64,000 nucleotides of DNA from Glycera tridactyla (GCA_965644265.1 OZ286460.1:98952001-99016000); one strand, 5' to 3'; shown: positions 274 through 57,797, counted from the stretch's first letter. A program made the numbers and translations. Notes: generated by a model not told the origin, from the sequence alone.

Positions 274-1443
274 GTGCTTCCAAGCTGGCTCATCTTCCTA
301 TCTCAGCTGGCATTTCAATTTTGCAATTTATACTACTACTCAGGCATAAATTGGTATCCTTGCTTCTATAACAATAGTATACTATATTGTGCTGTATGTA
401 TATAATTCTTCTCATGATATTGCCATTCATGGATTTTGTGATACTACAAAGAAATGATTACAAATGACTGATGAAATTTTACGAAGATCATGGAAGGCTA
501 CATTTTGCCTAATTTGTATCACATCTGTCATATTGATTCTCTTACTATTTCAAAGATGGCTGTCCATACAAAGGAGCAAAGATACAGAAAAATAATACTT
601 TATATGGTTATGTACTATTTAGGCTATTTTGACATTCTTGTGTAGCGAAATTACATATTGCATGAACATGGAATATTTCATCATGCGCTACATTAGCAAA
701 TAAACCTTCCATGAGTGAGATATTACATTGTCCTATGGACTAATCATGTCAGAAGAACTGGCACTGTATAGTATTCCACAAAGACCAAGGTTGTGGAGAG
801 TCACATACAAGCAACAATGCACACAATATTCTACTATACTTCATTCTTTGCATCACTGTCTGAACTGCAGAAGAGAAAGAATGCTCCGGGGGAATGAATT
901 ACTTGTAAATGAATTGACCCAACACCACAGCTTCATATATAAAGACCAAGAGAACATACATTACCAAAAAGACAAAGTACCCTCCCCTTCATGCTAATTT
1001 GTATCAGTAGGCTACTTCACATGATTGAGACCAAACTATTGGATAAATAAGTGACCTCATTTTGACAATACATTGAATGAATTTAGATATCTGATTAATC
1101 AGCTTCTCTGATTATAATAAATAGTCCATCTCCAGAAAATACCAATGGGAAAGCCATGTAAAGATGCCCATCCTGAAGGGAGAAACATATTTGACAAGAG
1201 ACAATGTAAGGTAATAATTGAGGGTAAAAGGACAAGCGACAAGGCAACACAGCGACCTCTTCAAACCTGGAGGGAAGAAAAAGGTGAATTAAAGAACAGG
1301 CGGTGAGATAAGAGACAGCAGGTCTAGTTGTACAATGCAACCAAAACTGCGTCAACTGCACTTTAAACACCCCCGAGTGGCAGGGGTGCCATGCATCGGC
1401 CATCATGCGATGTTGGCTCTTATGACCACCCTCATTACCATAC

Positions 1444-1542
1444 CTCAAAGATGGTATCTTCACAGAAGTTGACAAAGGAGAGCAGCTTTTCTTTCTCTCC
1501 ATCCTCCGTACAGACCTCATGGAGGAAGGCACGTTTGGAGTC
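1444..1542 (-). CDS. RyR: RyR exon 33b (alternative TaF exon) [33 protein letters not shown]
   Basis: 99 nt, tgttgtag| ... GAG|gtatgg, phase 0-0; paralogue of 1615-1713. Confidence 0.93.
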
Positions 1543-1614
1543 CTACAACATCATACACACCCAAACTTGAAAATGAAACTCTTCTCTACAAGTATACAGA
1601 GCATGTTTTCTCAC

Positions 1615-1713
1615 CTCAAAGATTGTGTCTTCACAGAAATTTACAAAGCACTCCAACTTTCCCTTCTCACCACCTTCATTCACGATATTATGAAGGAAAG
1701 TGCGCTTTGACTC
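1615..1713 (-). CDS. RyR: RyR exon 33a (alternative TaF exon) [33 protein letters not shown]
   Basis: 99 nt, ttttttgcag| ... GAG|gtgaga, phase 0-0; matches RyR1 [33 protein letters not shown]. Confidence 0.95.
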
Positions 1714-2553
1714 CTGCAAAAAAGGCCATAGTCATCTCATCCTATCCTTGAAACATTATCACATTAAAAGCATCTCTTCGTATGAAAGGACTGAGCGCTT
1801 ACTTCCTGACATTCAGCTTTCCACTATTTGGCTGAGATTTCAAGCGAATATATTGCAATGATATGGGCAGTAGAAGCTCTTGATATGATAAATGGCAGAA
1901 TGAACTTCATGTGAAGCATCCATCATAAACTGAAGATATAAAGTAATGATGCCTATTGATTAGATTTCGACATCATGATCTTGAAAATGGAGTACAATAA
2001 TTACGTATCATCAAATTTGAAGATTAAGCATTGACCTCAGCCTTATCCATATGTAAGCAGTTGAGACATACTGATGTAACCGTTATCTTCGTGAGCCAAG
2101 TCAAAAAGCAATGTGACAGTGCACATCTACCCATGGGGACCACTCAAGGAAAGTCTGAACCCCACTTACTTTGTCAATGACTCCCCAAGTACTCATGAGC
2201 AGTACATCCCATTTTGGAATGAACATGTAGAAGAGCACCTACACACAGGTATCTGGCAAGAAGTGCATCGGCATGAAATGTCCATCAGATGCCAAAGCAT
2301 GGAAGAGGAATGATATTGCCCAACTACACATGAAGATCTTTCTAAGAAATCTGACTTGGTGCAGCAGTCCTGGAGATACACATGAAGAAATCGGAACTTT
2401 TAGATCAAAGTACAAAAACAAACTGAAGTTAGTTGCATCCTTGCAATATTCTCTGAATACACAGTGGTATGACAAGTATTGAGTAATGAAAACCTTTCTC
2501 CAGCCATAATGCCAGCCCTAATGAGCAGAATGAGTATGGAATGCATGCAATAC

Positions 2554-2710
2554 CTTGATCTGTGGCTTTTCCCATTGATCAATGTGTGTTTGGGTGATTT
2601 CAAAGTAGACCCGCTCAATGCGTCCTGCACCACCCATGATCTCAATGCGACCAAGGTAGGGCTCAAAGTAGTCCAACACACATCTGGCTGTTTCCAAGAA
2701 CCTTTCAAGT
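2554..2710 (-). CDS. RyR: RyR exon 32 (R)[52 protein letters not shown]
   Basis: 157 nt, gttttcag| ... AAG|gtattg, phase 2-0. Confidence 0.97.
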
Positions 2711-2877
2711 CTGAAAACAAAGATAAAAGTGTATAAATGAACAAGAAGAGATGATACAGATCTGCTGTGCACTATTTCCATAAACTGATTCACTAAGCTA
2801 CATCTTACTGGATGAACAAGGACATATTGATGGAAGAAACCTAGCATTATGTTTGATCTGTTGAATATTTGCCAACA

Positions 2878-3090
2878 GCCCTATTCGACTGGTCGGTTTC
2901 GTTGAGTACGGCTGGTCTGTTGACTACGATTCGTATTCGGGTGGTCGCTTAACACTTTTTCGTTGTGTACGATCTCAACGGTCAATTGACTGTGTTGAAC
3001 TCGTTAAATGGAATCTATTCGGCTGGGCTACGGGCGTTGAGTACATATCCGTCAACGCACTTTCAACAAAACCGACCAGTCGAATAGGCC
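2878..3090. mobile_element. CpG-rich MITE-like element with about 26-bp terminal inverted repeats
   Basis: cctattcgactggtcggtttcgttga at 2880 is the reverse complement of tcaacaaaaccgaccagtcgaatagg ending at 3088 (1 mismatch). Confidence 0.75.
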
Positions 3091-3386
3091 TATAGTCCAC
3101 TAGATCCCTCTCAGGTAATGTTCATGTCTGGTATGTCAGTGATGATCAGGATATCTGATTACATCATCTGATATTTACTACTGTTATGGAGGACATGGCA
3201 AATACTGGCTCAATATCTTCAGTATGAGTAGACACTATTAGATGGAAGTGAATGAAGAGAAATATGTTATGAGAACCTCAAAAATATTGAAATCTCATAA
3301 AAACCTCGATAATTCTGATATGGTGAAATATCATATCAATACAATCCAGCAGTGAAGACATTCAAGTGAATGAAGTGAAACTTTAC

Positions 3387-3548
3387 CTTGGCTCATTAGG
3401 CATGTGCTCTGACAGATTGGTGAGCAATACTGCCACATTGAATCCGATATCCTTTGCGGGATTATGGAAACGATCTGTGAACTCATTGAAATCCACCTTG
3501 CCATCCTGGTTAGAATCCACACACATCATGATGTATTCGATCTCCTCA
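3387..3548 (-). CDS. RyR: RyR exon 31, EF-hand 2: EEIEYIMMCVDSNQDGKVDFNEFTDRFHNPAKDIGFNVAVLLTNLSEHMPNEP(R)
   Basis: 162 nt, cccatatag| ... AG|gtaaag, phase 2-2. Confidence 0.97.
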
Positions 3549-4516
3549 CTATATGGGGGAAAAGAGCAAAATATGCATCAAGATCATTCAAACACATGGC
3601 TACTAATGTCTGGAACATCAATAGAAAGTTTCCACATGTGTATATGCGAGGCTTTCCCCATCGCAATTCCAAGCAAAGTAAACTGGGAAAAGTCTAGTTG
3701 TTCTACAATTGTCAGTAATAGTTAACAATCTGACTTCTGGCTGATATCCTCATCAATGTTGACAATCTGCATACATACCTTCGTCGCCGGTCAATGACCA
3801 TCTTGATCAACAAATTGTTACCAATTCCACATGAATATGTTTGGCTGGCAGCTCCACAGCACATACACAGGATCAGCAAATTGCAGGCAATTTGAAAGGG
3901 GCCAAACTAGGTCCTGGTATGATCCTGGATCTTGCATATAATGTATGACCTCCAGTATTTGAAAATAAGAACTCATACACTTGCCACATCTCTGTGGTCT
4001 GGATAAAATTCGCACAAAGATAAAACTGAAACATACCCCAACAAATGAATGGCTGAAAAAAATCAGCAATTTCAAGCTGATCACCCAGGAGATTACTCAG
4101 ATATTAGTTTCTCATCCTTGTGCAAACTATGAGAAGGAGCAAGTAGATGTTTTGGGAGTAAAATGCTATCTACAGAATGAACATCCTGTTTGCTATTATG
4201 CTCGCTTTTATGCCACACTTGGTTAATCAAAGTCATTCATTCGCATGAAATTCAAGAAAAACCCACAAAATACTGGTTGGCAACCATTCTTGTTTTCAAG
4301 CTGCAATGACTGACCCCTCCTCATGCAAAGAGGCATTTTACTGACAATAGATGATTCTTTATGTATACAGGTAGGACGTAGCCATGGTACAGGTTTACTG
4401 CACAAATTTGATCTATAAGCAGTCAAACCAGGGTCTAATTTGCTTTGCTGCTGCTACCTCTTTACCATCATTCTTCATTTCAGTATGTATGTGGAGATAC
4501 ACACATAAGCTATATA

Positions 4517-4676
4517 CAGTCCAACCTCCTCTAAAAACCACTTCACTATAAAGGCCACCCCAAGCTGTGACCTTGGTAATATTTTCAACAGTAAATGACC
4601 TCTCTATAAAGACCACCTCCCTATAAAGGCCACATTTGATGCAACCAAAGGCAGTCTTCATAGAGAGGTTCAACTG
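4517..4676. mobile_element. Family R2 MITE (Tc1/mariner-type, TA target duplication)
   Basis: TA|cagtccaacctc ... gaggttcaactg|TA with internal aaagaccacct repeats; related copies at 10421-10596 and 43619-43779, fragments at 41400-41690. Confidence 0.8.
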
Positions 4677-4970
4677 TATTTCGTGTTACCAAGACATGTC
4701 TGAGCGAAGGCTTTTTATCCCAAAGGTGTACACATACATTTTTTCCACTCACCAACATCTCGTAATCCTTTTCACCAATGAATTCTTGCCTTCCCTCTAT
4801 TAAAGCTATGTTACTTCCTATCACAATGTCACTAAATAACTCCTCTCCAACTATTGGCTGAACACCAATTCTAATCGATTGATGAATTGAAACAATTTCC
4901 GAACGATGGGACTAGTCAATAAGGTCAGGAGTACAACAATAATACTTCATATCCTTATATTAAATGGATT

Positions 4971-5175
4971 GTTTGTTTGTTTAAGTTTAACGTCACTTAA
5001 ACCCACTTGGGTTATATCGGACTGAAAACCTGAAAATGCTGAAGAAAAGAGTCACTGCCTGCCGGGGGCCGTCCCTACTCTTTGCGAAAGACAGCAGTGG
5101 ATCTTTAACGTGCGTCAAGGAAAAGACTCCTATCAGCACGGCCGGCCTTTGATATCCCAGTCGGCATGCACTGGG
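4971..5175 (-). mobile_element. 5'-truncated SINE with (AAAC)n tail and 15-bp TSD, probably Deu/Nin-domain type
   Basis: TSD tatattaaatggatt at 4956-4970 and 5176-5190. The core ttaaagatcc..tttcgcaaagagtaggg..ccccgg resembles the Deu-SINE central domain as I recall it. A second copy lies at about 16097-16280. Confidence 0.65.
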
Positions 5176-6129
5176 TATATTAAATGGATTTATGCTAGGG
5201 TGTGGCATAAAAACCAAGGCATAGTTGTGATGGCACCTTATTTTACTAGGGAGTTGTCCATCAAAAAAAGCAACAATAAAGAATTGAGCATGTTAATATG
5301 AGTACAAGCCATCATAAAATGAACAACACAAGCACTCAGTTAATCTCAATTGACACCCATTAGAGAAGTTCGAGAACCCAGTTAATTCGACTGCACATTT
5401 ATGAAACAGATATGGTCAATATCGCAGTAAAAAAATCTGCAAACACTTGAAAAGACAATTAAATATTAGTGGACATTCATTAAGTGTTCAGTTGAGACCA
5501 AACTACAACTTGGCTTGGCGAAATTACAGCACGAATTAACATCTTTTATCCATGATAACTTTGCTCATACTGTATTTACATGGGTATCCTATTACTGCAA
5601 AAATACAGTCATGTGACATCATTTCATGAACAACATGGATTTTTTTCAGCAGAGTGCCAGGCAACCTCACATAAGAAATTAATTGTATTGGTTGATGATA
5701 TACACAAGACCACATGAGTGTCATGCAGGGCTTCCGAGACCAGCCATACTTCATGGACATGAAAATGCAGTGTGAGCCTCAGAGGGGTGAGTGCCGTGTT
5801 TTTGCATACGAAAACAAATGCCAGTCTACAGAGCCATACATGATGCAAATGTGGGCTTGTTTTTGTCACATAATCATATTAGATATGTAAGATATGATGA
5901 TATATGAATTCGACATGAAATCCATCTTCTCGGATGTGAATAAGCTGAAAAAAGAAAGTGAACAGTTAAGCATACAGTAGGCAGTGGATAATCCAGCCTC
6001 CAATGCTGTCTCTATGGGCCGGATGATTAAGGCTATTAACAATGGTTCCACCCACTGCCATAGGTAGCACTATTCCAGTTGCAATTGTGTCATATTGGGA
6101 CATTTTCCTTTTCAAGAGAATACTCTCCA

Positions 6130-6400
6130 GTGATGATAATCATCACTAACCCTATCATCATTCTTAATTTTACTACTATCATTATTATTATCATATCATT
6201 ATATTACTATTATCAATATTATTATAATCATTATCACCGCAAATATTGCTCCCATTACAGTTTTTACTTTTATTGATGTTCTGATTGTGAATATGATAAT
6301 AATGATGATTATAATAATCATCATTATTATCATTATTTTCAGGAGAATTTCTACCATCATTATCATAATTACCATCATTACCATTATCATCAGCTTGCTA
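6130..6400. repeat. (ATC/ATT/ATA)n low-complexity trinucleotide tract
   Basis: Visible degenerate triplet repeat; it explains the poly-Ile ORFs in the ORF track. Confidence 0.9.
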
Positions 6401-7646
6401 GTGCAATATATATTGAATATCAAAGACAAGATTCCACACAAGCTGCGCATAATTTTGCGATGTGTAAGAATCACAGTGTAATCATAGAAAGGATGTCTGT
6501 GCTTTCTCTGATAATTTGATGGAGTTGAATCCTTGATAGGAATTGCAAAGAGGTTCAAGGTCACATTTATTGACTATTTCAATGGCCCAAAATAAGGCAC
6601 TGGAATAGGGTATATACGAGTCTATGGACTGTTCATTCAGAGTTTGCCAGTTTCACGATTTAGGTTTCAACAACATGCATCAACACAAAGGATCAAGAAT
6701 GTCATGTATCCTTGATCAATCCACTGATATAGAAAAAATCTGAATCATCCTTTCATATATTTATTCTACAGTCTCTCCTGAAATAACTGAGTAACGCTTA
6801 ATGTCTCTTCAACCCAGGCTGGATCACGAGACCTCGTCCTGAAAAAGATGACATATAAAGATGAACTTTTCTCATAATGCTTCGCATTCATAGTGATGCC
6901 ATGGAATATTCAAACACACAGGTTGAGGGTCATACAAACCATCTTGTTAGTAATCTAAGCACACCACACATTAAAAGGTAAGAAGCAGTCCTGACCAATC
7001 AATTGACACAAACTGTTTAAGACTGGGAGTTGACAATCTCTAGAAAGTATTCAGACAAAATCTGACACACTGATGCCACAGATGACTGGTTCTTATTTCA
7101 TCCTAGATATCTCATTCGCTGCTTATGCGATACTATACTGGAACTGAACAGTGTGACACACAATAAAGCAGCTTTCTGATGCGATTCTGAGCGAACATGA
7201 CATCGTATATGCTGGATGAAGGCCATCATGGGCTGAATGCATATTTGTAAATATGTTTTTCTGTGGGATTGAATAAAGACCATTATAGATGGATGGATAA
7301 GGATGGATTGATAAGGATGGATGGTTACCAGTTGTAGCAGGATATCACTAGTTTATGTCAAATACTAGTGCAAAGAGACATGGCTACTCTTTGAATTCAA
7401 CATATCCCAGGAGGCGTTATTGTCTTTGAATTTCATGATGATAAAGGCCATGTGAGATAACCCAGCATTGCTGCGGGCATTGAATAATCTTGATTCTTGC
7501 TTCTCTGTCACATATGCATCACACTGAAAATTAAACATTCCCTGTCATATTCGAAATCATAGACTTTTTTGAATTTTGAGCATTCCTACAGAACTGAATG
7601 CATAGGCACACCTGAGAGTATGAGGGTCCAGACTGTGTATACATAC

Positions 7647-7714
7647 AGAGCTACCCGGCTTTGTGCTTTTGTCAGAGTCAATGATGACATAGAATTCTCA
7701 CTGTCTGTGCAATC
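7647..7714 (-). CDS. RyR: Candidate RyR exon 30e, degenerate EF1 variant DCTDSENSMSSLTLTKAQSRVA(L)
   Basis: 68 nt, ctcac..atttttgctag| ... CT|gtatgt, phase 0-2 like 30a-d, open frame; weak similarity to 30c. Confidence 0.4.
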
Positions 7715-8206
7715 CTAGCAAAAATATGTGAGATCTGTAAGCATAATAGATATGTTCACAAACACTCCCGATGTAAGCCTACGGCCATAGTAACTACAAC
7801 CTACTCAAATGACTTATCTGAATGACTAGTCAGTGATCAGATCATTTTTCTACTCAGGTTGAAACTCGATCAATTATTATCCAACATGTCGGATGTTCAT
7901 GCAATTTCTACCATCGAACACTGAATCGAATACCCGGTTGGTAATTTCATCAGCTTTTGACCCAATGCTTGATGGCAAGAATCAGCACAGCAGACCTGTA
8001 GTGTCTGTTGTCATTAGAACTTTGTTAATTTGGCAACAGCCAGGGTATATCGGATTGTACATGCATGCTGGGAATAATAATGAACAAAATAAGTTCTCCA
8101 TGAAGAAGAGTGAGACCATGTAAGATATGGTTCTTAGTAGTGTTCGTTGATGTTCAGTACAGATACTGCATGCCTTGGCAGAGTGGCCATGTGTTTTGGA
8201 ACTTAC

Positions 8207-8286
8207 TCCGAGTAGATCTTTTGAGCTTCCATTGCTTTCCTGAATTCTTTATGAGAAATAACACCATCCTTGTTGGTGTCAAATTC
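8207..8286 (-). CDS. RyR: RyR exon 30d (EF-hand 1 variant) EFDTNKDGVISHKEFRKAMEAQKIYS(D)
   Basis: 80 nt, ccatgcacag| ... GA|gtaagt, phase 0-2. Confidence 0.95.
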
Positions 8287-8695
8287 CTGTGCATGGAAAA
8301 TAAGGTCAAATGAATAGATATATCAAAGGTAGTTGTATGATCGCGTCCATGATGAGTTGCCGTTTTCACGCAAATGGTTAGGATGAATGAAAGGCAGAAA
8401 GAATGAAGTCAAAAACTTGAAATGAAGTGAAGGTGAATTGGGATAATGAACCAAAATCAATAGATGGATGAACTTGAGTGAGGGTTCCAGGTGTTTCGGT
8501 GCTGGTGGAATCTCTTGACTATCACCTGATGAGAAAAGATTGACCATCACATTGCTGAAATTTATTAGTCCTAGTAAACAAAACACACTATTATAAGTAA
8601 ATATGGATTGGATGAAATAACCTGGATATTACAAAAATAACAAGGTAAAATTGTAACATGCCTAAGGAATGGCTTGAGACTGGTAGGAGACTTAC

Positions 8696-8775
8696 GGTGT
8701 ATACACTTTTTGTGCTTCCATAGCTAGTTTGAACTCTTTATGTGACACAGTGCCATCCTGGTTTGCATCATATTC
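8696..8775 (-). CDS. RyR: RyR exon 30c (EF-hand 1 variant) EYDANQDGTVSHKEFKLAMEAQKVYT(P)
   Basis: 80 nt, atcccaacag| ... CC|gtaagt, phase 0-2. Confidence 0.95.
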
Positions 8776-9364
8776 CTGTTGGGATTGAATGCAAGCAAGA
8801 AAGAAGCAGAGAAAATAAATGAAGGAACACGAAAAAAGGATTGCATGAAAAGAAAAGCCCTGATTGACTAGAAGTGAAGAAAAAATGGGACTGGATGAAG
8901 TATGACACAAGGCTGTATGATTCATCCAAGAAATCATGTACAAAGAGACAGCTGAAATAACTGCATATTCATTTAGCAATGAGAAATGAAGTCAGAAAAA
9001 TAAATAGCATAACATTCATGATAAAGAGAGTTAAAACTCGGCAAATAAATTTAGCAATGAGAAATGGGGTCAGGAAATGAATATCATGATAACGCTCATA
9101 ATATGATGAGCTACCTCACAGATTTCTCAGATAAAAGATCAACCTAGTGGTTCTTCTTTCAAAATGAAAAGGGTGTATGTAAAATATAAATAGTCGGCAT
9201 CAAGATGGAGTTCTTAAAAGTACTTATGTGTATAATGGAATATGAACATCTAGAATAAAAAATGATATTCAATCTGGGGTGGAGATGACTTGACATTTTC
9301 TTCAGAGAAGAAAACACCTAACATGCCGGAATGAGACACGGTATGCCTGCAGGTCATCACTTAC

Positions 9365-9444
9365 GGTGTGTAAGCCTTTAGTTCTTCCAAAGCTAGACTG
9401 AATTCTTTAGGGGAAATAGTTCCATCGAGATTCTCATCATAAGC
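9365..9444 (-). CDS. RyR: RyR exon 30b (EF-hand 1 variant) AYDENLDGTISPKEFSLALEELKAYT(P)
   Basis: 80 nt, ctcacacag| ... CC|gtaagt, phase 0-2. Confidence 0.93.
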
Positions 9445-10036
9445 CTGTGTGAGTGCAAAACAGTACCACCAACAATAGACAACATTGAACCAGTGCAAAT
9501 ACCAATGGCTGCAGATGATATAGAAAAAAATGAGGAAGGAAAGAATCATTAATGATACAGAAACAAGACGTCCATACCAAAAATCAAATAGGTAGCTAAG
9601 TACAAACTAGATGAGTAGTATTACAACAGATGAAAGTACAATATACATATACATACATAAATAAATATAACTAACATCAGCAATGTATCAATCGAAGACA
9701 GAGTCATTATCTTTTATAGACTGATTCCTCCAAATGACCAACCTATTCCTCATAGATGGGAAAATTCCTGAGGTACAGGGATTCTATATCAATGCTCATC
9801 AGCAATGTGTTTAGTTCAATGTCAAATTTGATATGTCTACAGATACTGCAGAATGTTGATGATCATTGTTCACTAACATCATAGCAATTGTTGCTGATGT
9901 TATTTCCATTCATACGATGACTTCATAGATTCAATAGATACAATGTTTGACGGTGTGCAAAGCAAAATATAAAAGACACAGTAAAGATTTACCAACAGCC
10001 AAACAAAGCTCAGCTATGCCACATTTACATACACAC

Positions 10037-10116
10037 CGTTTATACACTTTTTGATTTGCCAGAGCACGCCGAAACTCTTTATACGAAAGTGAACCATCTT
10101 TATTAGTATCAAATTC
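10037..10116 (-). CDS. RyR: RyR exon 30a (EF-hand 1 variant) EFDTNKDGSLSYKEFRRALANQKVYK(R)
   Basis: 80 nt, ctaac..ttattttcag| ... CG|gtgtgt, phase 0-2. Confidence 0.92.
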
Positions 10117-10334
10117 CTGAAAATAAGAGTAGGTTAGACTGAACTACCCTATCGACACTAGTATCAAATTCCTGAAAATAAGAGGAGGTTAGACTGAACT
10201 ACAAGAAGAACTGATGACTATGGGTGATGCATAATTTCATGAAAAATATCTGAAAGCTTGAAGGCCGAGTAAACACAAAGCAATCTCAATCTTCACTGAT
10301 GGATTGATTTTTCAACATCATCATGATGGTAGGG

Positions 10335-10654
10335 TGTCCAGTTGCAGCTAACAATTGCTAACATTTTGTAACGAAAACAGGGTATCCCATCCTTTTTTGA
10401 GACACTTGAAATAGAGAATACAGTCAAAACTCTCTATAAAGACCGCCTTCATTTGCATAAAATGTGGCCTTTATAGGGAGGTGGTCTTTATAGAGAGGTC
10501 ATTTGCTGTTAAAATACTACCACAATCGCAGATCAGGGTGGTCTTTAGAGAAAGGTGGTCTTTATAGAGAGGTGGTCTTTAGAGGAGGTTCGACTATATC
10601 TGATGGGGCATTTTGCAAATGTTTTCTCTGTTAGCTCAACTGAACAGCCTGCAG
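10335..10654. mobile_element. R1 copy interrupted by an R2 MITE (10421-10596)
   Basis: The R1 halves rejoin as gaaTAtctgatgggg; TA is duplicated at 10419-10420 and 10597-10598. Confidence 0.8.
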
Positions 10655-11533
10655 ATAATACACAGTAATCTAATAGCTGAAATCCTCACAGCAAAATGAT
10701 TTCTCCATACATGCCAGTGATTTATGTACACCAGAACCTGCGATGATACTCCCTCACACAATCACTCATGGAAGACCACTTTTCAGACACCCTTTTCTAT
10801 CTAATATCATGTAATACACCTCGGATGAGAAACCACTTTTGTAACACCATATTTTTCATCATATATTGTGGTCGAGTAGGGTGGTAACCAGTCACAGGTT
10901 CTACTGTGTATTGTATAAAAAATTCCCTCAGTGGGTAGATAAAGCAGTACCAACAATACAATGACAGAACTAAAAAATCCTAAGTTTATATCCTAAATAA
11001 TTTTGTATTTTGGTCCCTGGTGTATCTATCCTCTATTCAAGACACTTGAATCCAAACCATATCATTGACTGAATGCAGTGGAAGATAAATAGGGTTCTCT
11101 CAAAATGATACCCCTATTTCTACAACTGTGTAGAATGGTGATCACACCATTGCAGCAACATTTCATCAAATGTCAGGATCATTATTCAGTTGCGAATCTA
11201 AGTCCAGCATTGGGTTCATTATTAGGAAAGATTCATTGAAATCCTAACCAGTACCCTATATCAAATGTGTTAAAAATGACCAGGGAAAATTTCAACTGTC
11301 ATAAATTTTCAGCAATCTGTCATTCGACTGAAGACATATCACTTTCTTAGATCAGGGTATGTGACTGGCATCTTGTTTGAAAAATAGTCAACAATTGATT
11401 GTGAACAATTTCAAAGCCAGCACGCATGAAAGTTCAGTCTCTTTCATTGGTAATATTTGGTTCAATTAACGAACTAGATAAATCAGAACATACATTCCTA
11501 TCTCTGATACAAAGTCAAGAAATCACCTCATAT

Positions 11534-11823
11534 GCAGGCTGTTCGGTTGAGCTAACAGAGTGATCATTTTCCAAATCCCCTATCAAATATCTGCCATCTA
11601 AATTGTGTCATAATAGAATGGAGCCCCTGTTTCCATTACAAAACGTCAGCGATTGTTAGCTGCAACTGGACATCCTGCAGGTTGTTCAGTTGCAGCTAAC
11701 ATTTTGAAGGATTACATTACAGCAAACAGGTCCCCATTCTTTTCCGTTGTACTTAGGATGAAAAATACTTGGTTGGGGATATGGCTGATAATTTCTCTGA
11801 TAGCCAAACTGAAAAGCCTGCTG
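11534..11823. mobile_element. Two abutting, oppositely oriented R1 copies (about 290-bp imperfect palindrome)
   Basis: Copies at 11534-11678 and 11677-11823 join at ctgcag. Confidence 0.7.
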
Positions 11824-13055
11824 ATCCTAATATGTAACATCCCCTAGAAGGAATTATGAACATTAAAGTTTTAATACTATTACTATCACCCATGCATCAG
11901 CAGATGTGCAATTGATTGTCTTGTGTCTTACATGGATCACCATACAGGCATGGTGATGAAAGCTTCCTGGGTTTCACATGACTATATATATATGTGTAGA
12001 ATGCCACCCACATGTGTAACTTCGCTTTTTTTCTCTTCAATGTCATAGTTGGTAGAATCCATGCAAACTTGCTGAATGTATGATCAAGTTCTGGTAAAAA
12101 TTAAAACTGAAAAATCTGCCCAGACCATGACAATTAAATTTGTGGGATTTATCTCGCCAATCACATCTCTGGTTAATGAATGGATGGCGTTCCACACAGA
12201 TTATGATATTTGTTTGAATGGTACATTCTTGGTTCAAGTATGTTCAGATATTCATAGTGGATGGCCTGTAATCATTGCAATTAAATAAAAAAAACAGCTG
12301 TAGCGAGATTCCAGAGACAGACAAACAAACAGAAACCTAATGGCAGAGGTCAACATATTGCTTGGAAGTGTTTCAACAAAGACCTGCAGAGTGATCGGTA
12401 GCAGCTGATATTCCCTTGAACCCTCTTATTTTTCATGATAGAAATGTGGTCATTCTAGAGAACTTAGGAAGAAAATTGATTGGGATTTGACCAATGTTTT
12501 CTCCAGCCACTTAACTGAACACTCAGCAGTCTTATACACAATATAAATACAGACATTTTGTGCAGACATTTTGCTATTTTTCACAAACTAAATAATTGAT
12601 ATGCTTCATGACATTCAATGTATATATATGCCCTCTTTAGAATTTCATTCCTTAGTCGGCACTTAAGACCATAAGAATGGGCTTCTTCTCCCTAGATTTT
12701 CCTGGTAAGAATTTTGATGCCTCTCTTTAAAGAGAAAATCATATTTGATAAGACTAAGCTGGTGATGATATTGACCATTTTAAAAGTTAGAACTTTAGGA
12801 CTGACGATGGATCTTCAACATTTTGTAACTCTGATAGAAATGAGCCTGCTGAGTCTCATGAAGACTGGCATATTACAATTCATATTTATCCTGCCAGGCA
12901 ATAACAAAAAGAGTGACGTGAATCAAGCATTCTGGCATCATGATAAAATCATTCAGCACTGAATACATTAAAAATATATGTGATTCAACGCTTGTGATCA
13001 ACTTATCATCCCATACTATGGAGGGAATTTGAAGTCCTGGAAAACTCCCACTCAC

Positions 13056-13121
13056 CATGAATGCCTCGGATGACGTCAGATCTTTCATCTTCAGGAAAAT
13101 GTCAAAGAACTTCAGGATCAT
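13056..13121 (-). CDS. RyR: RyR exon 29 MILKFFDIFLKMKDLTSSEAFM
   Basis: 66 nt, ttctttcag| ... ATG|gtgagt, phase 0-0. Confidence 0.97.
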
Positions 13122-13408
13122 CTGAAAGAAATTGTTGAAAGTGAAGGCATGTAAACAAATAAGAAAAACATCACTCAGTTGTGTAGAAAAAAAGGCCAAA
13201 TATAGCGAAGTTTGAAAATTGCTGATGTCAATAATGTATATAAAAACTATGCATGAGGTATATCGCTATTCTGTCAGTGTTATTATTTTTAAATACTCAT
13301 TTTTGGAAGCAGTCTGAGTCTCAGAATCCGCAGAAAATGTGAAAGCCAATCAGCAATAGGAATATAGATACCAAATCGATTTAGATAATGAGCCCGAAAT
13401 ATACATAC

Positions 13409-15583: not shown

Positions 15584-15801
15584 CTGGATGTACTCAGTGA
15601 TACTTCTGAACAGTTGTGCAGCAACATTGATGGCTCGGATGAAGCTATCTTTACCAGCAGGATCAATTGTTTCTTTCCCTGAGTAGTGCCAGTAGAAGTC
15701 CATGATAGATTCTTGTAGACGAAGCAAGTAGTCAACAGTCGAGATGATCAAGTTGATTGTTGTTGTGTTACCAGCTTGTGTACGCAAATAGTTCTGGAAT
15801 T
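15584..15801 (-). CDS. RyR: RyR exon 25 (E)[11 protein letters not shown]...SITEYIQ (includes the equivalent of the RyR1 Ca2+ ligand E3967)
   Basis: 218 nt, phase 1-0, CAG|gtgagc. Confidence 0.98.
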
Positions 15802-16096
15802 CTGCAAATGGGAAAGGCCTCCAATGAATTGAAATCATGATAAAACAATCAAAAAAGCTAGAAAGATATACAATAAAACCTGTGATGAAAGCCTATTCCA
15901 AATGTGTCCAGAAAGTGTCTCAGAATATCTCGTCTCTCAGTCGAGATATGGGGGACTCATAGCAGGTTCAATGTACTCATATGAGTTGTGTAAATCATTG
16001 GCAAAGGTAATTGTCATATTATCATTAGAGATAAAAACATGAACTATAGCAGCTATCAAATGAATTACAGAGGTGTCTTCTGTGTGAGAAATGTAT

Positions 16097-16280
16097 CCAC
16101 TAGCACATTGGTCCACTGAGTACACGAACCCAGTGCATGCCAACTGGGATATCAATGGCCAGCGGTATGTATGGGAGTCTTTTTCTGTATGCATGTTAAA
16201 GAACCACTGGTGTCCTTTGCAAAAAGTAGGAACAGCCCCTTTTCTTCAGCATTTTCAGTCTGATATAAGCCAATAAGTTT
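16097..16280 (+). mobile_element. Older copy of the SINE at 4971-5175
   Basis: Shares cccagtgcatgcc(a/g)actgggatatcaa and ttcttcagcattttcag. Confidence 0.7.
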
Positions 16281-16330: not shown

Positions 16331-16559
16331 CTAAGTTGTGGCCCTCACAAAGCAGCTGCAAGAATCGGAAGAGCTTGATTACATGCTCAGCATCATTGAG
16401 ATTCTTTGATGACTTGGAACCTTCAGCTACGCCTAAGCCTTCTGCTTTGTTGCACCTCTCAAATGCATCAAGGTCGAGTACACTGCACTGCTGCATCAAT
16501 CCAGCCATGGATGTGAAGAAACCAATGTCCTTCTTGTCTTTCAGATGAGCCAACATCCT
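16331..16559 (-). CDS. RyR: RyR exon 24 [15 protein letters not shown]...[11 protein letters not shown] (includes the equivalent of the RyR1 Ca2+ ligand E3893)
   Basis: 229 nt, phase 0-1, G|gtcagt. Confidence 0.98.
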
Positions 16560-17523: not shown

Positions 17524-19064
17524 CTGTTAAAGCCATGAGCATATTATGAAACTGAATGAACTGGCATGGGTCAATCTTCCGGACTGATAATCCAATCCTC
17601 TTTTCACATAAGATTATCCGTTTTGTATTATCACATCCATACATTATGATGATGAAGAAATTAGACCAATGACCAAAATGCAATGTACTCATCCACACAA
17701 ATGGATAACACTGCTCACCAATCCCAACTCAATTTGAAAACAGTGAGCACACAAAAGAACAGACAATAGGGATTCATCAAATGTCATCTACTGTTGGCAG
17801 AAGCCAATGCCCTCCCACTGGACACATAACTCATGGAAGAATTATCATGGATATCACACCTAACAATGCTATTCCTAACTACACCCATATCAGTTTACTG
17901 TACATACGAACAAATAATTCAACTTTATATACATATAATTAACCCTGACTCTCCTCTTAAAAATTTAATTTGACATACATATAATCAACCCCTGACTCTC
18001 CTCTCAAAGAGCAAGATTTTGGATGATGTCCCAAGCTTGAGGCATCACTCAACATGCAATTCTGTAGTTCCAACTAGCCTAAAAAAAATCGTATCCGACG
18101 GAATAATCTTTTTTTGCAACTCTGTGGCAATGTGTATTACAACCTGAATGTCCACTCCTCTCAAATTCAAACATTTCCTTAGTTCCATTGCTTCCGTCAA
18201 GTTCCAGGCCATTTTACATGAAGTGAACAAAGCCTCTGTCTCCTGATATACATGTATTGTTTTTCGTGATACCAATTTTGATCAATGGCTAGATGGTATC
18301 AATGGGCATGTCAACATCCAGAATACAATCAAATACAGAAAAATGCAATGATATCATGATGAAAATTGAAAAATAAAATGAAAGGATTAATTACATCTAG
18401 ATCATCCAGAGATGAATACATATTTCAAATGAACAGAATTATATGTCACATGGTAAACTAGGGAAAGAGAATCAAAGGTTCACACAGGGTTCTACAACAA
18501 TACTGATTCAGTAAGAAACATTACCCAATATAAATATAATTCAGAAAAAGGGTCATGAAATATTTCTCAAAACACGACATGAGGCACATCAGTTTTGTAT
18601 TATTAAAGAGTGTTATGAGTGATGAGATTTGGCAGAAAGCCAGAGATTCTCATCAATGTGGAGAGGATTTCCATATATCACACATGTCAGAGAGCAATCA
18701 GGAGTTCATGAAGTTATCATGCAATTTATCAATATCCTATGTCACTATTCCATATTGACATCATATTGAATGGAAATAGTCGATGAAATATATTACATCA
18801 ATAAAAGTAAACGATTTCATTGAAATTCATAAAAAAATCCCAATGTAATGATCGCAGAAAATGTTGGTGCCCAGATGGCTATATGGATGGAAATTTAGAA
18901 ATAAACTCAAAGTTTGTTGCAACACCAACATGCAAGATATGGATTATAACTTGTGAAAAATGAAGTTCTGTTATATTGGGCAGCTATGTTCGATACAACA
19001 GACAGTATATGCATGCACAGTACTGAAACAATGAAAACATTCACAAATAGGTGTATTATGCAAA

Positions 19065-19068
<4 letters not shown>

Positions 19069-19138
<70 letters not shown>
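19069..19138. repeat. (TG)n microsatellite
   Basis: About 35 TG units. Confidence 0.98.
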
Positions 19139-19140
<2 letters not shown>

Positions 19141-20065
19141 TGGTTGCATGTGCATTTGTTAGTGTGTATGTGTAGTATTGTATATGTGTGCATTCTACTT
19201 TTTCGATTTAATAAGGTGGACAGTACAACAATTAGAAGCTGAAATATACCCTTAAAATATCTCCTGCCAGCTGGTGGAAACACAGGAGAAAGAGAACCAT
19301 GATGTGTTTTTTTCAGTTTTAGGATGTTAACAATAAAATCATAAATTCAAATTCCTAACTATCGAAGTTAAGAATGATGCCTGGGTCCTGTTCATACATC
19401 AGCTGAATCTTTCACATGGTTGTACCAACCAACCGAGTGTCCAGTGTGTTTCATTTCAATGGTGTTTTGGTCAAAATTTATCATGTACAACATATGTCAC
19501 TCAGTGGTGAAACCATCTGAAGCCTATCCAAACAATTGCATGAGAAAATGGCGCATATTCTATTAAGATAAGATTTTTGAAGGGTTTCATACACAAAGAT
19601 GAGATCCAGCCTTGATGGTTTATTGGATTGCAACTGCCATGAACTGACTGCCATCTGGGACAAGTTTGGCTGGGTGACAATTGTAGCAAACTGTTGACAA
19701 TCTCGTGTCCGACTTGTGACTATGTTGACAAATTGTTAACAATTCGCGGACATACCCGCAAGGTTGTCTTTGCCTGTCGATGATGTCACCTCTATCATTT
19801 ACTGAAGGCAGTGATCATCCCACCACCTGAATCGTCAAGTTTGCTACAATTGTAAGCTCATACCCCCGAAACGCACGTGTGGGATAAACAAGATTGCAAC
19901 AATTTAGACCAGCCAAAATTCTCCCTGGCAGAGTAACTTTGTTGACAAATGCAAGCGACACCTCACAGAAATGTTCAACCATGGTGCCATCCAATGTTAA
20001 CCACTGCACTCATCCATGAACTATTCTACCAATGAATTGACTTGACATTGCAGGTAGATACATAC

Positions 20066-40303: not shown

Positions 40304-40462
40304 GTGAGATTTTGACCAGAGATTGAAGACATCTGCGACACAGAGGTACAACAATTCCGTATCAAGTGATGGATGTTTCAACCAGTGTGAGCGATGGAGA
40401 TCCACATATTTGATGAGCAATGGATAGAAGGCATACATGTCACGCACCAAGATTTGGAAAGA
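40304..40462 (-). CDS. RyR: RyR exon 14 [21 protein letters not shown]...FNLWSKSH
   Basis: 159 nt, phase 0-0, CAC|gtgagt. Confidence 0.97.
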
Positions 40463-40642
40463 CTGGAAAACGAAGACAAATATAATCATAAATTACAAAT
40501 CTACTACATACCATATTTTCGAAAGGCAAGGTATATCCTTCGATAAACAACTCAACATGTCCAACAAATGACCTGCAGTACTATGTATGTTCTTATCAAG
40601 TGCGTAGACCTTAGAGCTGAATGTATACAGTATACTACCCTA

Positions 40643-51186: not shown

Positions 51187-51320
51187 NNNNNNNNNNNNNN
51201 NNNNNNNNNNNNNNNNNNNNNNNNNNNNNNNNNNNNNNNNNNNNNNNNNNNNNNNNNNNNNNNNNNNNNNNNNNNNNNNNNNNNNNNNNNNNNNNNNNNN
51301 NNNNNNNNNNNNNNNNNNNT
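51187..51320. other. Assembly gap (N)
   Basis: N run. Confidence 1.
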
Positions 51321-51853
51321 GTGTTCATAAAAATGCGATACTTCTGACTCCTTTTTTTTAAATTGCTCCTAAATGACATAGTCACCAAATGATGGCAACT
51401 CTATCGAAGATTGAATCTCACTGTCTTCATGTTTCAGAACGAACTTTTCGAAGAACGTGGTAATCATCCTTTGGAGCAATCAACTAATATCATCTGTATT
51501 TTGGATTTTCTGGAAATATTGTTCAATTCTCAGAAGATATGACTAAACAAGATCACCCATTTTATTACCAAAAAACTAACATGGACGATACTCAGATTTC
51601 TATACTAATATACCTGTACATAATTCTACATACACAGATACCAACAGAAATATAAATTCAGTGTCTATTGGTCCCAGTGATCACGAAGCATGCTGTTCAA
51701 ACTTCTCTCATATCTGCTCCACTAACTCTATGTCAAACTAGATGTATTGTAAAAATTAAACAGCATACATTATATACCAGCAAGAATAATTTCAGCCTAC
51801 AGAGCACTGCAACTAATATTTGTAACTATGAGAATTTATGAGAAAGTACTGAC

Positions 51854-51935
51854 CTTTGGACGAATGTGGAACTGCTGGTCCCCAATGCATACAGGGCATT
51901 CAGGACACGGTAACAGCAGAGTTGGATATCACCAA
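51854..51935 (-). CDS. RyR: RyR exon 8 (V)GDIQLCCYRVLNALYALGTSSSTFVQ(R)
   Basis: 82 nt, phase 1-2, AG|gtcagt. Confidence 0.96.
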
Positions 51936-52731
51936 CTACAAACAGAAAGACACACCAAATTAAAAACTATCACATGTGTTGCCTCAACTTTCGATACTCA
52001 CAATTTCAATATTCCAAATCATTTAGAAAATTGGTTTTTGAACATTCATCAAGAACGGTCAATAATCTTTCAATTTCTGATGATTCTTCTTTATTATTTG
52101 TAAAATATCACATGCATGGGCATACCTTCTCTCGTTACCAAACCTGGGGTGGAATAAATGGTATTTAACAAGGAAAAGGTAACATAGAAACTTTCTTGGG
52201 AGAATGTTTCACAGGAGGTGCAGTCAGATTAGAAAGAATGACATCTGTATATCCGACCACCCATTTTCTGTGAAAGTGTTCATCAGCATTTCATCAAAAA
52301 CCACAATGACAGAAAATCCCTACACACCCTTGCAAGACAGCCAGTTAGACATCACGGAAATATCCATGTTGCTGAATCAAAAATAGGATTCGCAAAGTGA
52401 TTTTAATACAGGGGATACAATCTCATAGATAATGGTGTTCTGATTTCATGCATGACCCCAAAACAAATGTGAATGTGACCATCCTCAAAATGATCATGAG
52501 AAAAAAGATGACACCACAACCATCAAGCACAATAACTAGATCAGTAGAACCGTGAACAACCGCAGCAGAGTTAGGCAGGTCATCGCTGAAATACCACCTC
52601 AGGGTTTCGGGCACTTTAAATCTCAGACCCCTGAAGAAGGGAGACCTGGCGGCCCAGCTAAGATTGAAGGAATCTTGACTCCTGTCCAACTCCAACCACA
52701 GCTCCTGGAAGACAGCCTCAAAATGACTTAC

Positions 52732-52970
52732 CAAGGAGTTCTGATCCAAATCGGTTGCGTCCCAAATGTTCAAACATGGATGTCATAACAGGTAACAGTA
52801 CCATATGGACATAGTTGAGACTTGTCGCACCACGCACTATAGTTCCTTTCACGTGACTGAACCGACCAATCTTGAGATTGCTGACTGTTTGTGTGAGATC
52901 ATCAGCGGCATGATTGAAGAGGGGTAACAATGACCCACGCACAATCTCCGGACTGTTACGCACCACCGCT
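52732..52970 (-). CDS. RyR: RyR exon 7 (R)AVVRNSPEIVRGSLLPLFNHAADDL...FGSELL
   Basis: 239 nt, phase 2-1, G|gtaagt. Confidence 0.96.
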
Positions 52971-53191
52971 CTGTGAGGCAAGACAAAGTTGGAGTGAAAA
53001 GACACAACTTTCATGTGGTAAAACTGACAAGAGCAGGCAATAAATCATAAACAATATTTACTTTCTTTTCAGTAATAGTGGATAGGGAATGGTTCCTCTC
53101 TGAAATAAACTTTTTTTTGGGAGAGATTCGTATTGATCACCCACAGCCATTTATGATGTTATCCACACACACACAACACACACAGACAAAC

Positions 53192-53607: not shown

Positions 53608-53944
53608 GTAAGTGCCTCATTCAGGACTCAGGGTTCCAACCTCCATGAGAAACAAAAAAAATTAAAGTTGATACATGTATGGATGTGTTGCTTGTGCATC
53701 AAGTCTGCATGAATGAAATAAGCCAGTATGTATGTGTGTGTGTGTGTGATGTACACATATGGATGTGTAACTAAGCCTGCCATATAAGGGCACATATTCG
53801 ATGAAACAAAGCCAGAATTCGTACATATCAAGCTTTTAACTGATTTCACACTCATATATATAATCAACATTCTTGAAACCATCACCCACTGGCTAATACC
53901 AAAGTTATATTACCTCCCAACTTTGAAAACATTGTCATACTTAC

Positions 53945-57714: not shown

Positions 57715-57716
<2 letters not shown>

Positions 57717-57797
57717 CAAAAGCACAGAATCATCAAGTTGTATGATTCAAATACTATATCATACAGAAGCATCAATATGAACTATAACATTTCTTAC

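What the first reader, a model, noticed from the sequence alone, without database searches (positions are those of the whole stretch)
1444..13121. A combinatorial splice code over RyR's ligand-sensing core (at least 4 x 2 = 8 subunit types)
The only duplicated exons I found among 33 positions both fall in the Ca2+/ATP/caffeine-sensing core, two constitutive exons apart. The primary Ca2+-site residues (LCEGHN, TEYIQ) stay in constitutive exons. With a tetrameric channel, mixed assembly would enlarge the repertoire further. Inference: this is an isoform-diversification system for a Ca2+-release channel, possibly with coupled choice of exons 30 and 33.
Basis: inference. Interest (0 to 1): 0.72.

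Follow-up and report, generated by a model that had tools for sequence, protein, structure and literature searches.

The report
Either-or exons in annelid RyR
A worm's calcium-release channel (ryanodine receptor) gene holds four interchangeable copies of the exon for its first EF-hand calcium loop and two copies of the exon at its ATP/caffeine site. This is a larger version of an either/or exon switch shared with molluscs, brachiopods and ribbon worms, but RNA showed only one EF-hand copy, so the proposed eight-type "code" is unproven.

Summary
On the minus strand lies part of a ryanodine receptor (RyR) gene of an annelid-clade animal.

- **EF-hand 1:** four tandem 80-nt exons (A-D).
- **TaF segment:** two tandem 99-nt exons (X1/X2) for the part that carries ATP and caffeine contacts.
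- These are the only duplicated exons among 32 exon loci in the window.
- All six copies are intact, have AG/GT splice sites and keep the ligand residues.
- For EF-hand 1 the reading frame allows exactly one copy per mRNA.

The EF-hand 1 switch is not unique to this genome. RefSeq isoforms of molluscs and a ribbon worm carry two versions. Lingula has three genomic copies and Biomphalaria two. Four copies is an expansion. The TaF pair was not seen outside the annelid clade.

Spliced contigs from four runs in two studies join exon 29 to D only, with no coverage of A, B or C. X1/X2 usage in this species could not be tested. Eight subunit types, coupled choice and mixed tetramers are therefore unsupported.

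I found no paper describing alternative exons at either RyR site. The scan has noted similar exon arrays in other genes of this genome (SERCA, a GlyR-like gene), but not this one elsewhere.

The parts
13056..13121 (-). Constitutive exon before the EF-hand 1 cluster (MILKFFDIFLKMKDLTSSEAFM). It ends in phase 0. The E of SSEAF corresponds to rabbit RyR1 E4075.
   Evidence: RNA contigs join 13056 to 8286.
10104..10200 (-). A 42-nt direct repeat (41/42 identical, 55 nt apart) that duplicates the branch-point-like TCTAAC, the pyrimidine tract, the AG and the first 13 nt of exon A. The upstream copy is a decoy acceptor at 10172/10171 whose use would run into an in-frame TGA.
   Evidence: Read from the sequence. 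Partial tblastn/tblastx hits. TRF did not score it.
10037..10116 (-). EF-hand 1 alternative exon A, 80 nt: EFDTNKDGSLSYKEFRRALANQKVYK(R). The donor GTGTGT is weak.
   Evidence: The same ...AAACG|GTGTGT exon end is found in Lingula copy 1. No RNA coverage in 4 runs.
9365..9444 (-). EF-hand 1 alternative exon B, 80 nt: AYDENLDGTISPKEFSLALEELKAYT(P). It is the most divergent copy. Position 1 is Ala where RyR1 has D4079.
   Evidence: No RNA coverage.
8696..8775 (-). EF-hand 1 alternative exon C, 80 nt: EYDANQDGTVSHKEFKLAMEAQKVYT(P). It is the sister copy of B.
   Evidence: No RNA coverage.
8207..8286 (-). EF-hand 1 alternative exon D, 80 nt: EFDTNKDGVISHKEFRKAMEAQKIYS(D). This is the canonical, default copy.
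   Evidence: It is 24/26 identical to Biomphalaria EF-hand 1. Long spliced contigs in 4 runs join exon 29 to D to exon 31.
8169..8173 (-). GCAUG (as GGCAUG) 34 nt into the intron after D. Equivalent motifs lie at 8657-8661 (after C, +35) and 9322-9326 (after B, +39).
   Evidence: In one search, 7 of 98 GTRAG sites on this strand (B, C and D among them) have GCATG at +30..+45, giving P(at least 3 of 4) of about 1e-3.
3387..3548 (-). Constitutive exon for EF-hand 2 (EEIEYIMMCVDSNQDGKVDFNEF...), RyR1 4106-4159. Its first base completes the codon that each EF-hand 1 exon leaves open.
   Evidence: The loose end of the X4 contig after 8207 reads into this exon.
2554..2710 (-). Constitutive exon ([26 protein letters not shown]...WEKPQIK). 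It ends in phase 0, and its last K corresponds to RyR1 K4211.
1615..1713 (-). TaF alternative exon X1, 99 nt: [33 protein letters not shown], RyR1 4212-4244. It keeps K4214, R4215 and E4239.
   Evidence: It is 31/33 identical to the annelid-clade transcript P0196.
1543..1614 (-). The 72-nt intron between X1 and X2. The other intervals I measured between exons of this gene are over 300 nt. The acceptor of X2 is G/T-rich and poor in pyrimidines.
   Evidence: No significant RNA structure (z = -1.16).
1444..1542 (-). TaF alternative exon X2, 99 nt: [33 protein letters not shown]. It has the same ligand residues as X1. GCATG lies at +36 and +50 downstream (1404-1408, 1390-1394).
15584..15805 (-). 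Single-copy exon ending in TEYIQ (RyR1 3898-3970, with Ca2+-site residues E3967 and Q3970).
16332..16559 (-). Single-copy exon ending in LLCEGHN (RyR1 up to 3896, with Ca2+-site residues E3893 and H3895).

Best explanation
The window holds the central part of the RyR gene of an annelid-clade animal. It contains two clusters of alternative exons, each built so that one copy is used per mRNA.

**Cluster 1: EF-hand 1 (shown unless marked).** It offers four versions of the 26-residue segment that forms the last turn of the entering helix, the whole 12-residue Ca2+ loop and the exiting helix of EF-hand 1 (rabbit RyR1 4079-4104). Each exon is 80 nt. Skipping all copies, or including two, shifts the frame into a stop, so only one-of-four mRNAs are productive. 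D, the 3'-most and most canonical copy, is the default. Inferred: A, B and C are minor or cell-type-specific choices. A GCAUG (Rbfox-type) element about 35 nt downstream of B, C and D, and the weak donor plus decoy acceptor of A, would provide the regulation.

**Cluster 2: TaF (shown unless marked).** It offers two versions of the segment RyR1 4212-4244. The ATP-phosphate contacts (K4214, R4215) and the caffeine contact (E4239) are the same in both versions. The about 20 residues between them differ. Inferred: exclusivity would have to come from the unusually short 72-nt intron and the weak X2 acceptor, because 99 nt is a multiple of 3.

**Functional inference.** In mammalian RyR1 the EF-hand domain docks on the S2-S3 loop of the neighbouring subunit and sets Ca2+/Mg2+-dependent inhibition. 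The EF-hand 1 variants would therefore most likely tune the inactivation threshold and the inter-subunit coupling. The TaF variants would tune how ATP and Ca2+ binding is passed to the gate.

**Evolution.** The EF-hand 1 cluster is an expansion, to four copies, of a two- or three-exon switch that is old in Lophotrochozoa.
For: **Anatomy.**
- Equal length, equal phase, AG/GT at every copy, no stops.
- Only single inclusion of an EF-hand 1 exon is in frame.

**Selection.**
- Exon nucleotide identity is 59-72%. The 80-nt flanks are at 15-41% ungapped identity.
- dN/dS is 0.14-0.41 where dS could be calculated, and dS is saturated for the other pairs.
- Eleven of 26 positions are invariant, and they are the EF-hand pattern D-x-N-x-D-G-x-h-S-x-K-E-F.

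**RNA.**
- Spliced contigs of 5-17 kb in 4 runs from 2 studies join 13056|8286 with GT..AG ends and continue into exon 31.

**Conservation.**
- Two EF-hand 1 versions occur among RefSeq isoforms of oysters, abalone, octopus, mussels, clams, Biomphalaria, Pomacea and Lineus. Both versions also occur in assembled transcripts of an octopus relative.
- Tandem 80-nt genomic copies: Lingula has 3 and Biomphalaria has 2.
- The canonical copy is always the last in the array.
- A shares its ...KR end and its GTGTGT donor with Lingula copy 1.

**Residue mapping.**
-, with PMC10832476, PMC11096358 and PMC9168041 for the roles of E4075, D4079, K4101, K4211/K4214/R4215 and E4239.

**Placement.**
- The window groups with Capitella teleta and two unnamed transcripts at SH-aLRT 100 in a quick tree.
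Against: - No contig of the 4 runs covers A, B or C, although D sits in contigs of depth 45-220.
- Usage of X1 versus X2 in this species was not tested.
- A profile of B plus C found nothing in the protein collection (weak because of the length filter).
- B and C have no clear counterpart in other phyla.
- The TaF exon is single in Biomphalaria and shows no alternative in any mollusc or nemertean isoform set. The only hint that X2 is older than this species is P0195, which is ambiguous: 24/33 identical to X2 against 22/33 to X1.
- No docking or selector RNA structure was found.
- All functional consequences are inferred from mammalian RyR1.
Confidence: 0.7

Rival explanations
1. Only D (and probably X1) is a working exon. 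A, B, C and/or X2 are leftover duplicates that the spliceosome ignores or that only yield rare, unproductive transcripts. The gene then makes essentially one protein in this region.
For: - There is zero contig depth on A, B and C in 4 runs from 2 studies, while D is always used.
- A has a weak GTGTGT donor and a decoy acceptor in front of it.
- X2 has a poor acceptor tract.
- B is the most divergent copy, at most 16/26 identical to any other RyR EF-hand 1.
- The B plus C profile search was blank.
Against: - All copies keep exact length, frame, splice sites and every EF-hand or ligand residue, while their flanks have randomised.
- dN/dS is well below 1.
- GCAUG is kept at the same distance behind B, C and D.
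- In relatives both EF-hand 1 versions are annotated, and both are assembled from RNA.
- Logan contigs drop rare variants, and the tissues of the runs are unknown.
Confidence: 0.2
2. One reading: all 4 x 2 combinations are made, the choice at the two clusters is coupled, and mixed tetramers multiply the repertoire into a splice code for Ca2+ release.
For: - The two clusters lie in one gene, two exons apart, in the same structural module.
- GCAUG elements follow B, C, D and X2 and could give common regulation.
- Other genes of this genome are reported by earlier scan notes to carry exon arrays (not checked here).
Against: - There is no RNA evidence for more than one EF-hand 1 choice and none at all on TaF choice or on linkage.
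- In C. elegans unc-68 only 6 of 16 possible combinations were detected (PMC7644089).
- Heteromeric assembly is pure inference.
Confidence: 0.1
3. The repeated exons are an assembly artefact, such as collapsed or duplicated haplotypes.
For: None found. The window has N gaps, but these lie elsewhere (51187-59857).
Against: - The copies differ at 28-41% of bases and sit in unrelated intron sequence.
- Independent RNA contigs match D and its junctions exactly.
- The same arrangement exists in Lingula and Biomphalaria.
Confidence: 0.01

Closest known systems
EF-hand 1 alternative exons of lophotrochozoan RyR genes, visible in RefSeq isoform sets (oysters, Haliotis, Octopus, Mytilus, Mercenaria/Ruditapes, Biomphalaria, Pomacea, Lineus) and as tandem genomic exons in Lingula and Biomphalaria
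   Same: - Same position, after ...SSEAF(L/M).
- Same 80-nt size, same phase and tandem order, with the canonical copy last.
- In each mollusc checked, one of the two versions ends in R (mostly ...SR or ...TR), while the other usually ends in E, D or another non-basic residue.
   Different: - This gene has four copies instead of two or three. B and C (ending ...YTP) have no evident counterpart outside this gene.
- I found no paper that describes the switch in any of these animals.
Insect RyR mutually exclusive exon pair a/b in the second SPRY domain (Troczka et al. 2018, PMC6026295)
   Same: One RyR gene per genome is diversified by a conserved pair of mutually exclusive exons.
   Different: The insect pair sits in a different domain (N-terminal SPRY2, not the EF-hand or TaF core) and has two copies only. 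The paper never mentions EF-hand.
C. elegans unc-68 alternative first exons and DR2 cassette exons (Marques et al. 2020, PMC7644089)
   Same: Tissue-specific RyR isoforms come from a single gene, and combinations are fewer than theoretically possible (6 of 16).
   Different: These are cassette exons and alternative promoters in divergent region 2, not homologous substitution exons in the ligand-sensing core.
CaV2.1 (CACNA1A) exons 37a/37b, mutually exclusive exons in the EF-hand-like region of a Ca2+ channel (own knowledge; papers listed were not read)
   Same: An either/or exon swaps an EF-hand-type module of a Ca2+ channel and changes its Ca2+-dependent regulation.
   Different: It is an unrelated channel family at the plasma membrane, with two copies, and it is a vertebrate example.
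Mammalian RyR1 EF-hand domain / S2-S3 loop inhibition module (PMC10832476, PMC11096358)
   Same: The alternative exon covers RyR1 D4079 to T4104, including K4101. The contacts E4075 and K4101 are present in every version.
   Different: Mammals vary this module between paralogous genes (RyR1 versus RyR2), not by splicing. The invertebrate EF-hand 1 loops are canonical DxNxDG...E loops, unlike the degenerate RyR1 loop.

Membership tests
Ryanodine receptor (RyR) | Sequence homology along the central/core solenoid, EF-hand pair and TaF region | tested here: met
   32 colinear tblastn exon loci match RyRs of many phyla. PDB hits to RyR1/2/3 have E-values of 1e-29 to 1e-9.
Ryanodine receptor (RyR) | Ca2+-activation site residues (RyR1 E3893, H3895, E3967, Q3970) | tested here: met
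   LLCEGHN and TEYIQ align to those positions. The residue list comes from PMC9168041. T5001 lies outside the window.
Ryanodine receptor (RyR) | ATP triphosphate contacts K4211/K4214/R4215 and caffeine contact E4239 | tested here: met
   ...PQIK|(E/D)SKR... and FCEDTIFE are present in both X1 and X2.
Ryanodine receptor (RyR) | Six-helix pore domain and C-terminal domain | not testable with these tools
   The gene runs off the low end of the window after X2.
Mutually exclusive exon cluster | Tandem homologous exons of the same length and phase, each with its own splice sites | tested here: met
Mutually exclusive exon cluster | A mechanism that forbids zero or several copies | tested here: met
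   EF-hand 1: 80 nt, so skipping or double inclusion gives stops. For X1/X2 (99 nt) the frame does not enforce it. Only the 72-nt intron and the weak acceptor are suggestive, so the pair is inconclusive on this point.
Mutually exclusive exon cluster | Each variant seen in mRNA, one per molecule | tested here: inconclusive
   D alone is seen in 4 runs, with zero depth on A-C. Contigs hide rare forms.
Mutually exclusive exon cluster | Variants kept by selection or conserved in other species | tested here: met
   dN/dS is below 1 and the flanks have decayed. The EF-hand 1 switch is present in Mollusca, Nemertea and Brachiopoda. For B, C and X2 specifically, cross-species conservation is not shown.
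Canonical Ca2+-binding EF-hand loop | 12-residue loop with D(1), N/D(3), D(5), G(6), hydrophobic(8), E(12) | tested here: met
   All four copies read D-x-N-x-D-G-x-(L/I/V)-S-x-K-E. The best PDB matches of D are CaBP1, centrin and calmodulin loops. Ion binding itself is not testable here.
Rbfox-regulated exon | (U)GCAUG in the proximal downstream intron, and dependence on Rbfox | tested here: inconclusive
   GCAUG lies at +34, +35 and +39 after D, C and B, and at +36 and +50 after X2, with a chance of about 1e-3. The motif is GGCAUG rather than UGCAUG at the EF-hand 1 exons. Binding and regulation are not testable.

The most novel reading that the evidence does not exclude
The four EF-hand 1 versions and the two TaF versions give RyR subunits with different Ca2+/Mg2+ inactivation thresholds and different ATP/Ca2+ coupling. 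They are chosen cell type by cell type through GCAUG-binding (Rbfox-like) factors, possibly in a coordinated way at the two sites. This would be a splicing-based counterpart of the RyR1/RyR2/RyR3 gene family in an animal with a single RyR gene.
Probability: 0.15. Interest if true: 0.75.

Novelty: new variant of a known kind. Interest (0 to 1): 0.45.

Why it matters
Vertebrates set the Ca2+/Mg2+ inhibition of RyR differently in skeletal and cardiac muscle by using different genes. Part of that difference maps to the EF-hand domain (PMC10832476).

Here a single invertebrate gene swaps exactly that module by splicing. The swap is conserved across several lophotrochozoan phyla and is enlarged to four versions in this worm. 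That gives naturally selected, ready-made variant sets of EF-hand 1, and in annelids of the TaF segment between the ATP and caffeine contacts. These could be placed into expressible RyRs to ask what these segments do.

It also shows that an apparently undescribed RyR splice site is already sitting in public isoform annotations.

Tried and rejected
- **The species' own full-length RyR protein** was not in the protein collection, so isoforms of this species could not be listed.
- **A profile of the B and C exons** (extended into the intron ORFs to pass the length filter) found nothing. The result is uninformative rather than negative.
- **Genomic loci.** Ostrea and Mytilus could not be fetched because only the longest product is indexed. 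The Lingula contig ends or mis-joins after the EF-hand 1 copies, so its TaF exon was not seen. Two metagenome RyR contigs (L001, L002) have intron-poor genes and no alternative copies.
- **Docking/selector RNA pairing.** The inverted-repeat scan of 7900-13200 shows only SINE-like repeat pairs and short, probably chance arms. Folding of the X1-X2 region is not better than shuffles (z = -1.16).
- **P0195 as proof that X2 is used in a relative.** I first read it that way and rejected this after counting: 24/33 against 22/33.
- **Assembly artefact.** Rejected.


Full report
**What is in the window**

The window has about 38% G+C, long introns and dispersed repeats. tblastn with full-length RyRs gives 32 colinear exon loci on the minus strand, from 59007 down to 1441. 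They correspond to residues of about 2950-4350 in a roughly 5100-residue RyR. The gene leaves the window at its low end.

I stitched the window's exons, aligned them with 29 RyRs and built a quick maximum-likelihood tree. The window falls in a clade with Capitella teleta and two unnamed metatranscriptome proteins (P0195, P0196) at SH-aLRT 100. This clade lies inside Lophotrochozoa, next to Lingula and Lineus. Only the quick tree finished; the careful search did not. This agrees with earlier scan notes that call this genome annelid.

**Check of the observation**

Self-tblastx of the first 20 kb finds two sets of paralogous exons. Reading the sequence fixes their boundaries.

| Exon | Coordinates (minus strand) | Length | Donor |
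|---|---|---|---|
| A | 10116..10037 | 80 nt | GTGTGT |
| B | 9444..9365 | 80 nt | GTAAGT |
| C | 8775..8696 | 80 nt | GTAAGT |
| D | 8286..8207 | 80 nt | GTAAGT |
| X1 | 1713..1615 | 99 nt | GTGAGA |
| X2 | 1542..1444 | 99 nt | GTATGG |

- Every copy follows an AG and none has a stop codon.
- A sensitive tblastn of each exon peptide against the whole window shows no second copy of any other exon.
- The flanking constitutive exons are 13121..13056 (...SSEAFM), 3548..3387 (EF-hand 2) and 2710..2554 (...WEKPQIK).
- The Ca2+-site motifs LCEGHN and TEYIQ align to RyR1 E3893/H3895 and E3967/Q3970. Both lie in single-copy exons (residue roles from PMC9168041).

**What the alternative exons encode**

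I numbered residues by aligning the flanking exons to rabbit RyR1 and counting across, assuming no gap. I cross-checked this against the rabbit RyR1 sequence from memory.

- The 80-nt exon corresponds to RyR1 4079-4104. That is the end of the entering helix, the 12-residue EF-hand 1 loop and the exiting helix.
- All four copies keep the canonical loop D-x-N-x-D-G-x-(L/I/V)-S-x-K-E.
- All four also keep the Lys that corresponds to K4101.
- The copies differ at position 1 (Ala in B where RyR1 has D4079), at loop positions 2, 4, 7 and 10, along the exiting helix, and at the last two residues (KR, TP, TP, SD).
- In rabbit RyR1, K4101-D4730 and E4075/Q4078/D4079-R4736 link the EF-hand domain to the S2-S3 loop of the neighbouring subunit. 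K4101 mutations weaken Ca2+/Mg2+ inhibition (PMC10832476; PMC11096358).
- The 99-nt exon corresponds to RyR1 4212-4244. K4214, R4215 and E4239 are the same in X1 and X2. The stretch between them differs ([18 protein letters not shown] versus [18 protein letters not shown]).

**Are the copies built to be used one at a time?**

- *EF-hand 1:* yes, by frame. Exon 29 ends in phase 0, each copy leaves two bases over, and exon 31 supplies the third. Skipping all copies gives an immediate stop, and every double inclusion gives a stop within the second copy or in the next exon.
- *X1/X2:* the frame does not help, because 99 is 3 x 33. The intron between them is only 72 nt, while the other intervals I measured between exons of this gene are over 300 nt. 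X2 also has a G/T-rich acceptor. This is compatible with steric exclusion but does not prove it.
- I found no docking/selector pairing and no significant local structure.

**Are the copies under selection?**

- Exon nucleotide identity between copies is 59-72%. The 80 nt on either side are at 15-41% ungapped identity, which is essentially random.
- Nei-Gojobori dN is 0.21-0.42. dS is 1.0-2.9 or saturated, giving dN/dS of 0.14-0.41 where it could be calculated.
- The intron after B, C and D keeps a GGCATG at +39, +35 and +34. X2 has GCATG at +36 and +50, and A has none.
- 7 of 98 GTRAG sites on this strand, including B, C and D themselves, have GCATG at +30..+45. With that rate, three or more of four has a probability of about 1e-3.
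It fits a GCAUG (Rbfox-type) downstream enhancer, but nothing here tests binding.

**RNA evidence**

- A search with 1400-10200 found four runs that hold only 6% of its words. A search with one exon found the same study and a second one holding 69% of the exon's words. That is the pattern expected of RNA.
- Laying three runs of study P1 and one of study P7 on 7900-13200 shows one long contig in each (5.0-16.9 kb, depth 45-222). It joins 13056 to 8286, skipping 4769 nt with GT..AG ends on the minus strand.
- In run X4 the contig then runs on into the start of exon 31.
- The bins that contain A, B and C have zero depth in all four runs.
- D is therefore the expressed default. Contigs can drop rare variants and the tissues are unknown, so this is not proof that A-C are silent. 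It is, however, the only expression evidence, and it does not support a four-way choice.

**Comparison with other animals**

Two protein searches gave RyRs of many phyla. Cluster members gave their annotated isoforms.

- *Two EF-hand 1 versions within one species:* Ostrea/Magallana, Haliotis, Octopus, Mytilus, Mercenaria/Ruditapes, Biomphalaria, Pomacea and the nemertean Lineus. Both versions also occur among Logan transcript assemblies of an octopus relative.
- *No EF-hand 1 alternative in the isoforms read:* Ptychodera (15), Antedon (9), sea urchins, Asterias, Schistosoma (11), ticks and a spider.
- *Genomic DNA:* tandem 80-nt EF-hand 1 exons, three in Lingula anatina and two in Biomphalaria pfeifferi.
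- In each case the copy most like D is the last one in the array.
- Lingula copy 1 ends ...AAACG|GTGTGT exactly like A. In each mollusc checked, one version ends in R as A does; where the genomic order is known (Biomphalaria) that is the upstream copy.
- A and D thus look like the two old types. B and C (sister copies, both ending YTP) look like later additions. D is 24/26 identical to Biomphalaria, A and C reach at most 20/26 against any other RyR, and B at most 16/26.
- *TaF exon:* it is single in Biomphalaria, and no isoform set shows an alternative. Within the annelid clade, P0196 carries an X1-type exon (31/33). P0195 carries a divergent exon that shares D1, A5, E9 and E18 with X2 but is only 24/33 identical to X2 against 22/33 to X1. 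Capitella has a third variant. The age of the X1/X2 pair is therefore open.

**Literature**

Full-text searches found RyR mutually exclusive exons only in the second SPRY domain of insects (PMC6026295). They also found alternative first exons and DR2 cassette exons in C. elegans unc-68, where 6 of 16 combinations were seen (PMC7644089). No paper in the library connects RyR alternative exons with the EF-hand or TaF region, or with molluscs or annelids. The library lacks most subscription journals, so this is not proof of absence.

**Verdict**

The thing itself is two clusters of substitution exons in the Ca2+/ATP-sensing core of an annelid RyR.

- The EF-hand 1 cluster is a four-copy expansion of a switch that is old in Lophotrochozoa and already visible in public isoform annotations.
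- The TaF pair is so far seen only here.
- The most likely role is tuning of Ca2+/Mg2+ inhibition and inter-subunit coupling (EF-hand 1) and of ligand-to-gate coupling (TaF). This is inferred from mammalian RyR1.
- The combinatorial and coupled "code" of eight or more subunit types is not supported by any data I could obtain.

Noticed in passing
window 10104-10200 (minus strand): A 42-nt direct repeat, 41/42 identical and 55 nt apart, duplicates the TCTAAC branch-like site, the pyrimidine tract, the AG and the first 13 nt of exon A. Use of the upstream (decoy) acceptor would read EFDTSVDRVVQSNLLLFSGI and then hit a stop. It looks like a recent small duplication that could lower productive use of A.
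   Followed up: partly
window 10331-10656 and 11530-11701; also 127-271, 4511-4710, 5064-5176, 16128-16240: Copies of a SINE-like dispersed repeat lie in both orientations inside RyR introns. The pair upstream of exon A forms 57-61 nt inverted arms at 84-86% complementarity. RNA contigs that match this repeat at 90-95% pile up to summed depths of about 8,000-43,000, so the family is abundant in transcripts.
   Followed up: partly
proteins P0231-P0246, P0224-P0237, P0455-P0468 (Macrobrachium RyR isoforms): In two prawn species the annotated RyR isoforms do not alternate EF-hand 1. They alternate the segment just before it (…DLTSSTTFQ versus …EVTSSASFQ), which corresponds to the exon holding RyR1 E4075. 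A second lineage seems to vary the same EF-hand entry helix by a different exon.
   Followed up: no
L004 (Lingula anatina LFEI02001085.1) 52074-59653: The Lingula RyR gene model stops at the second of three EF-hand 1 exon copies, and an OATP gene follows on the other strand. Yet the deposited protein continues through EF-hand 2, TaF and the pore. The contig or the model is probably mis-joined there.
   Followed up: no
window 19058-19217: A long (CA/TG)n microsatellite lies in an RyR intron.
   Followed up: no
window 55011-55124 versus 40304-40477: Two different constitutive exons share weak similarity ([20 protein letters not shown] against PLVERYFRAHKSYFITNPSL, E = 0.006-0.04). They lie about 15 kb apart at different positions of the protein. 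This looks like an internal repeat of the RyR helical domain, not alternative exons.
   Followed up: no
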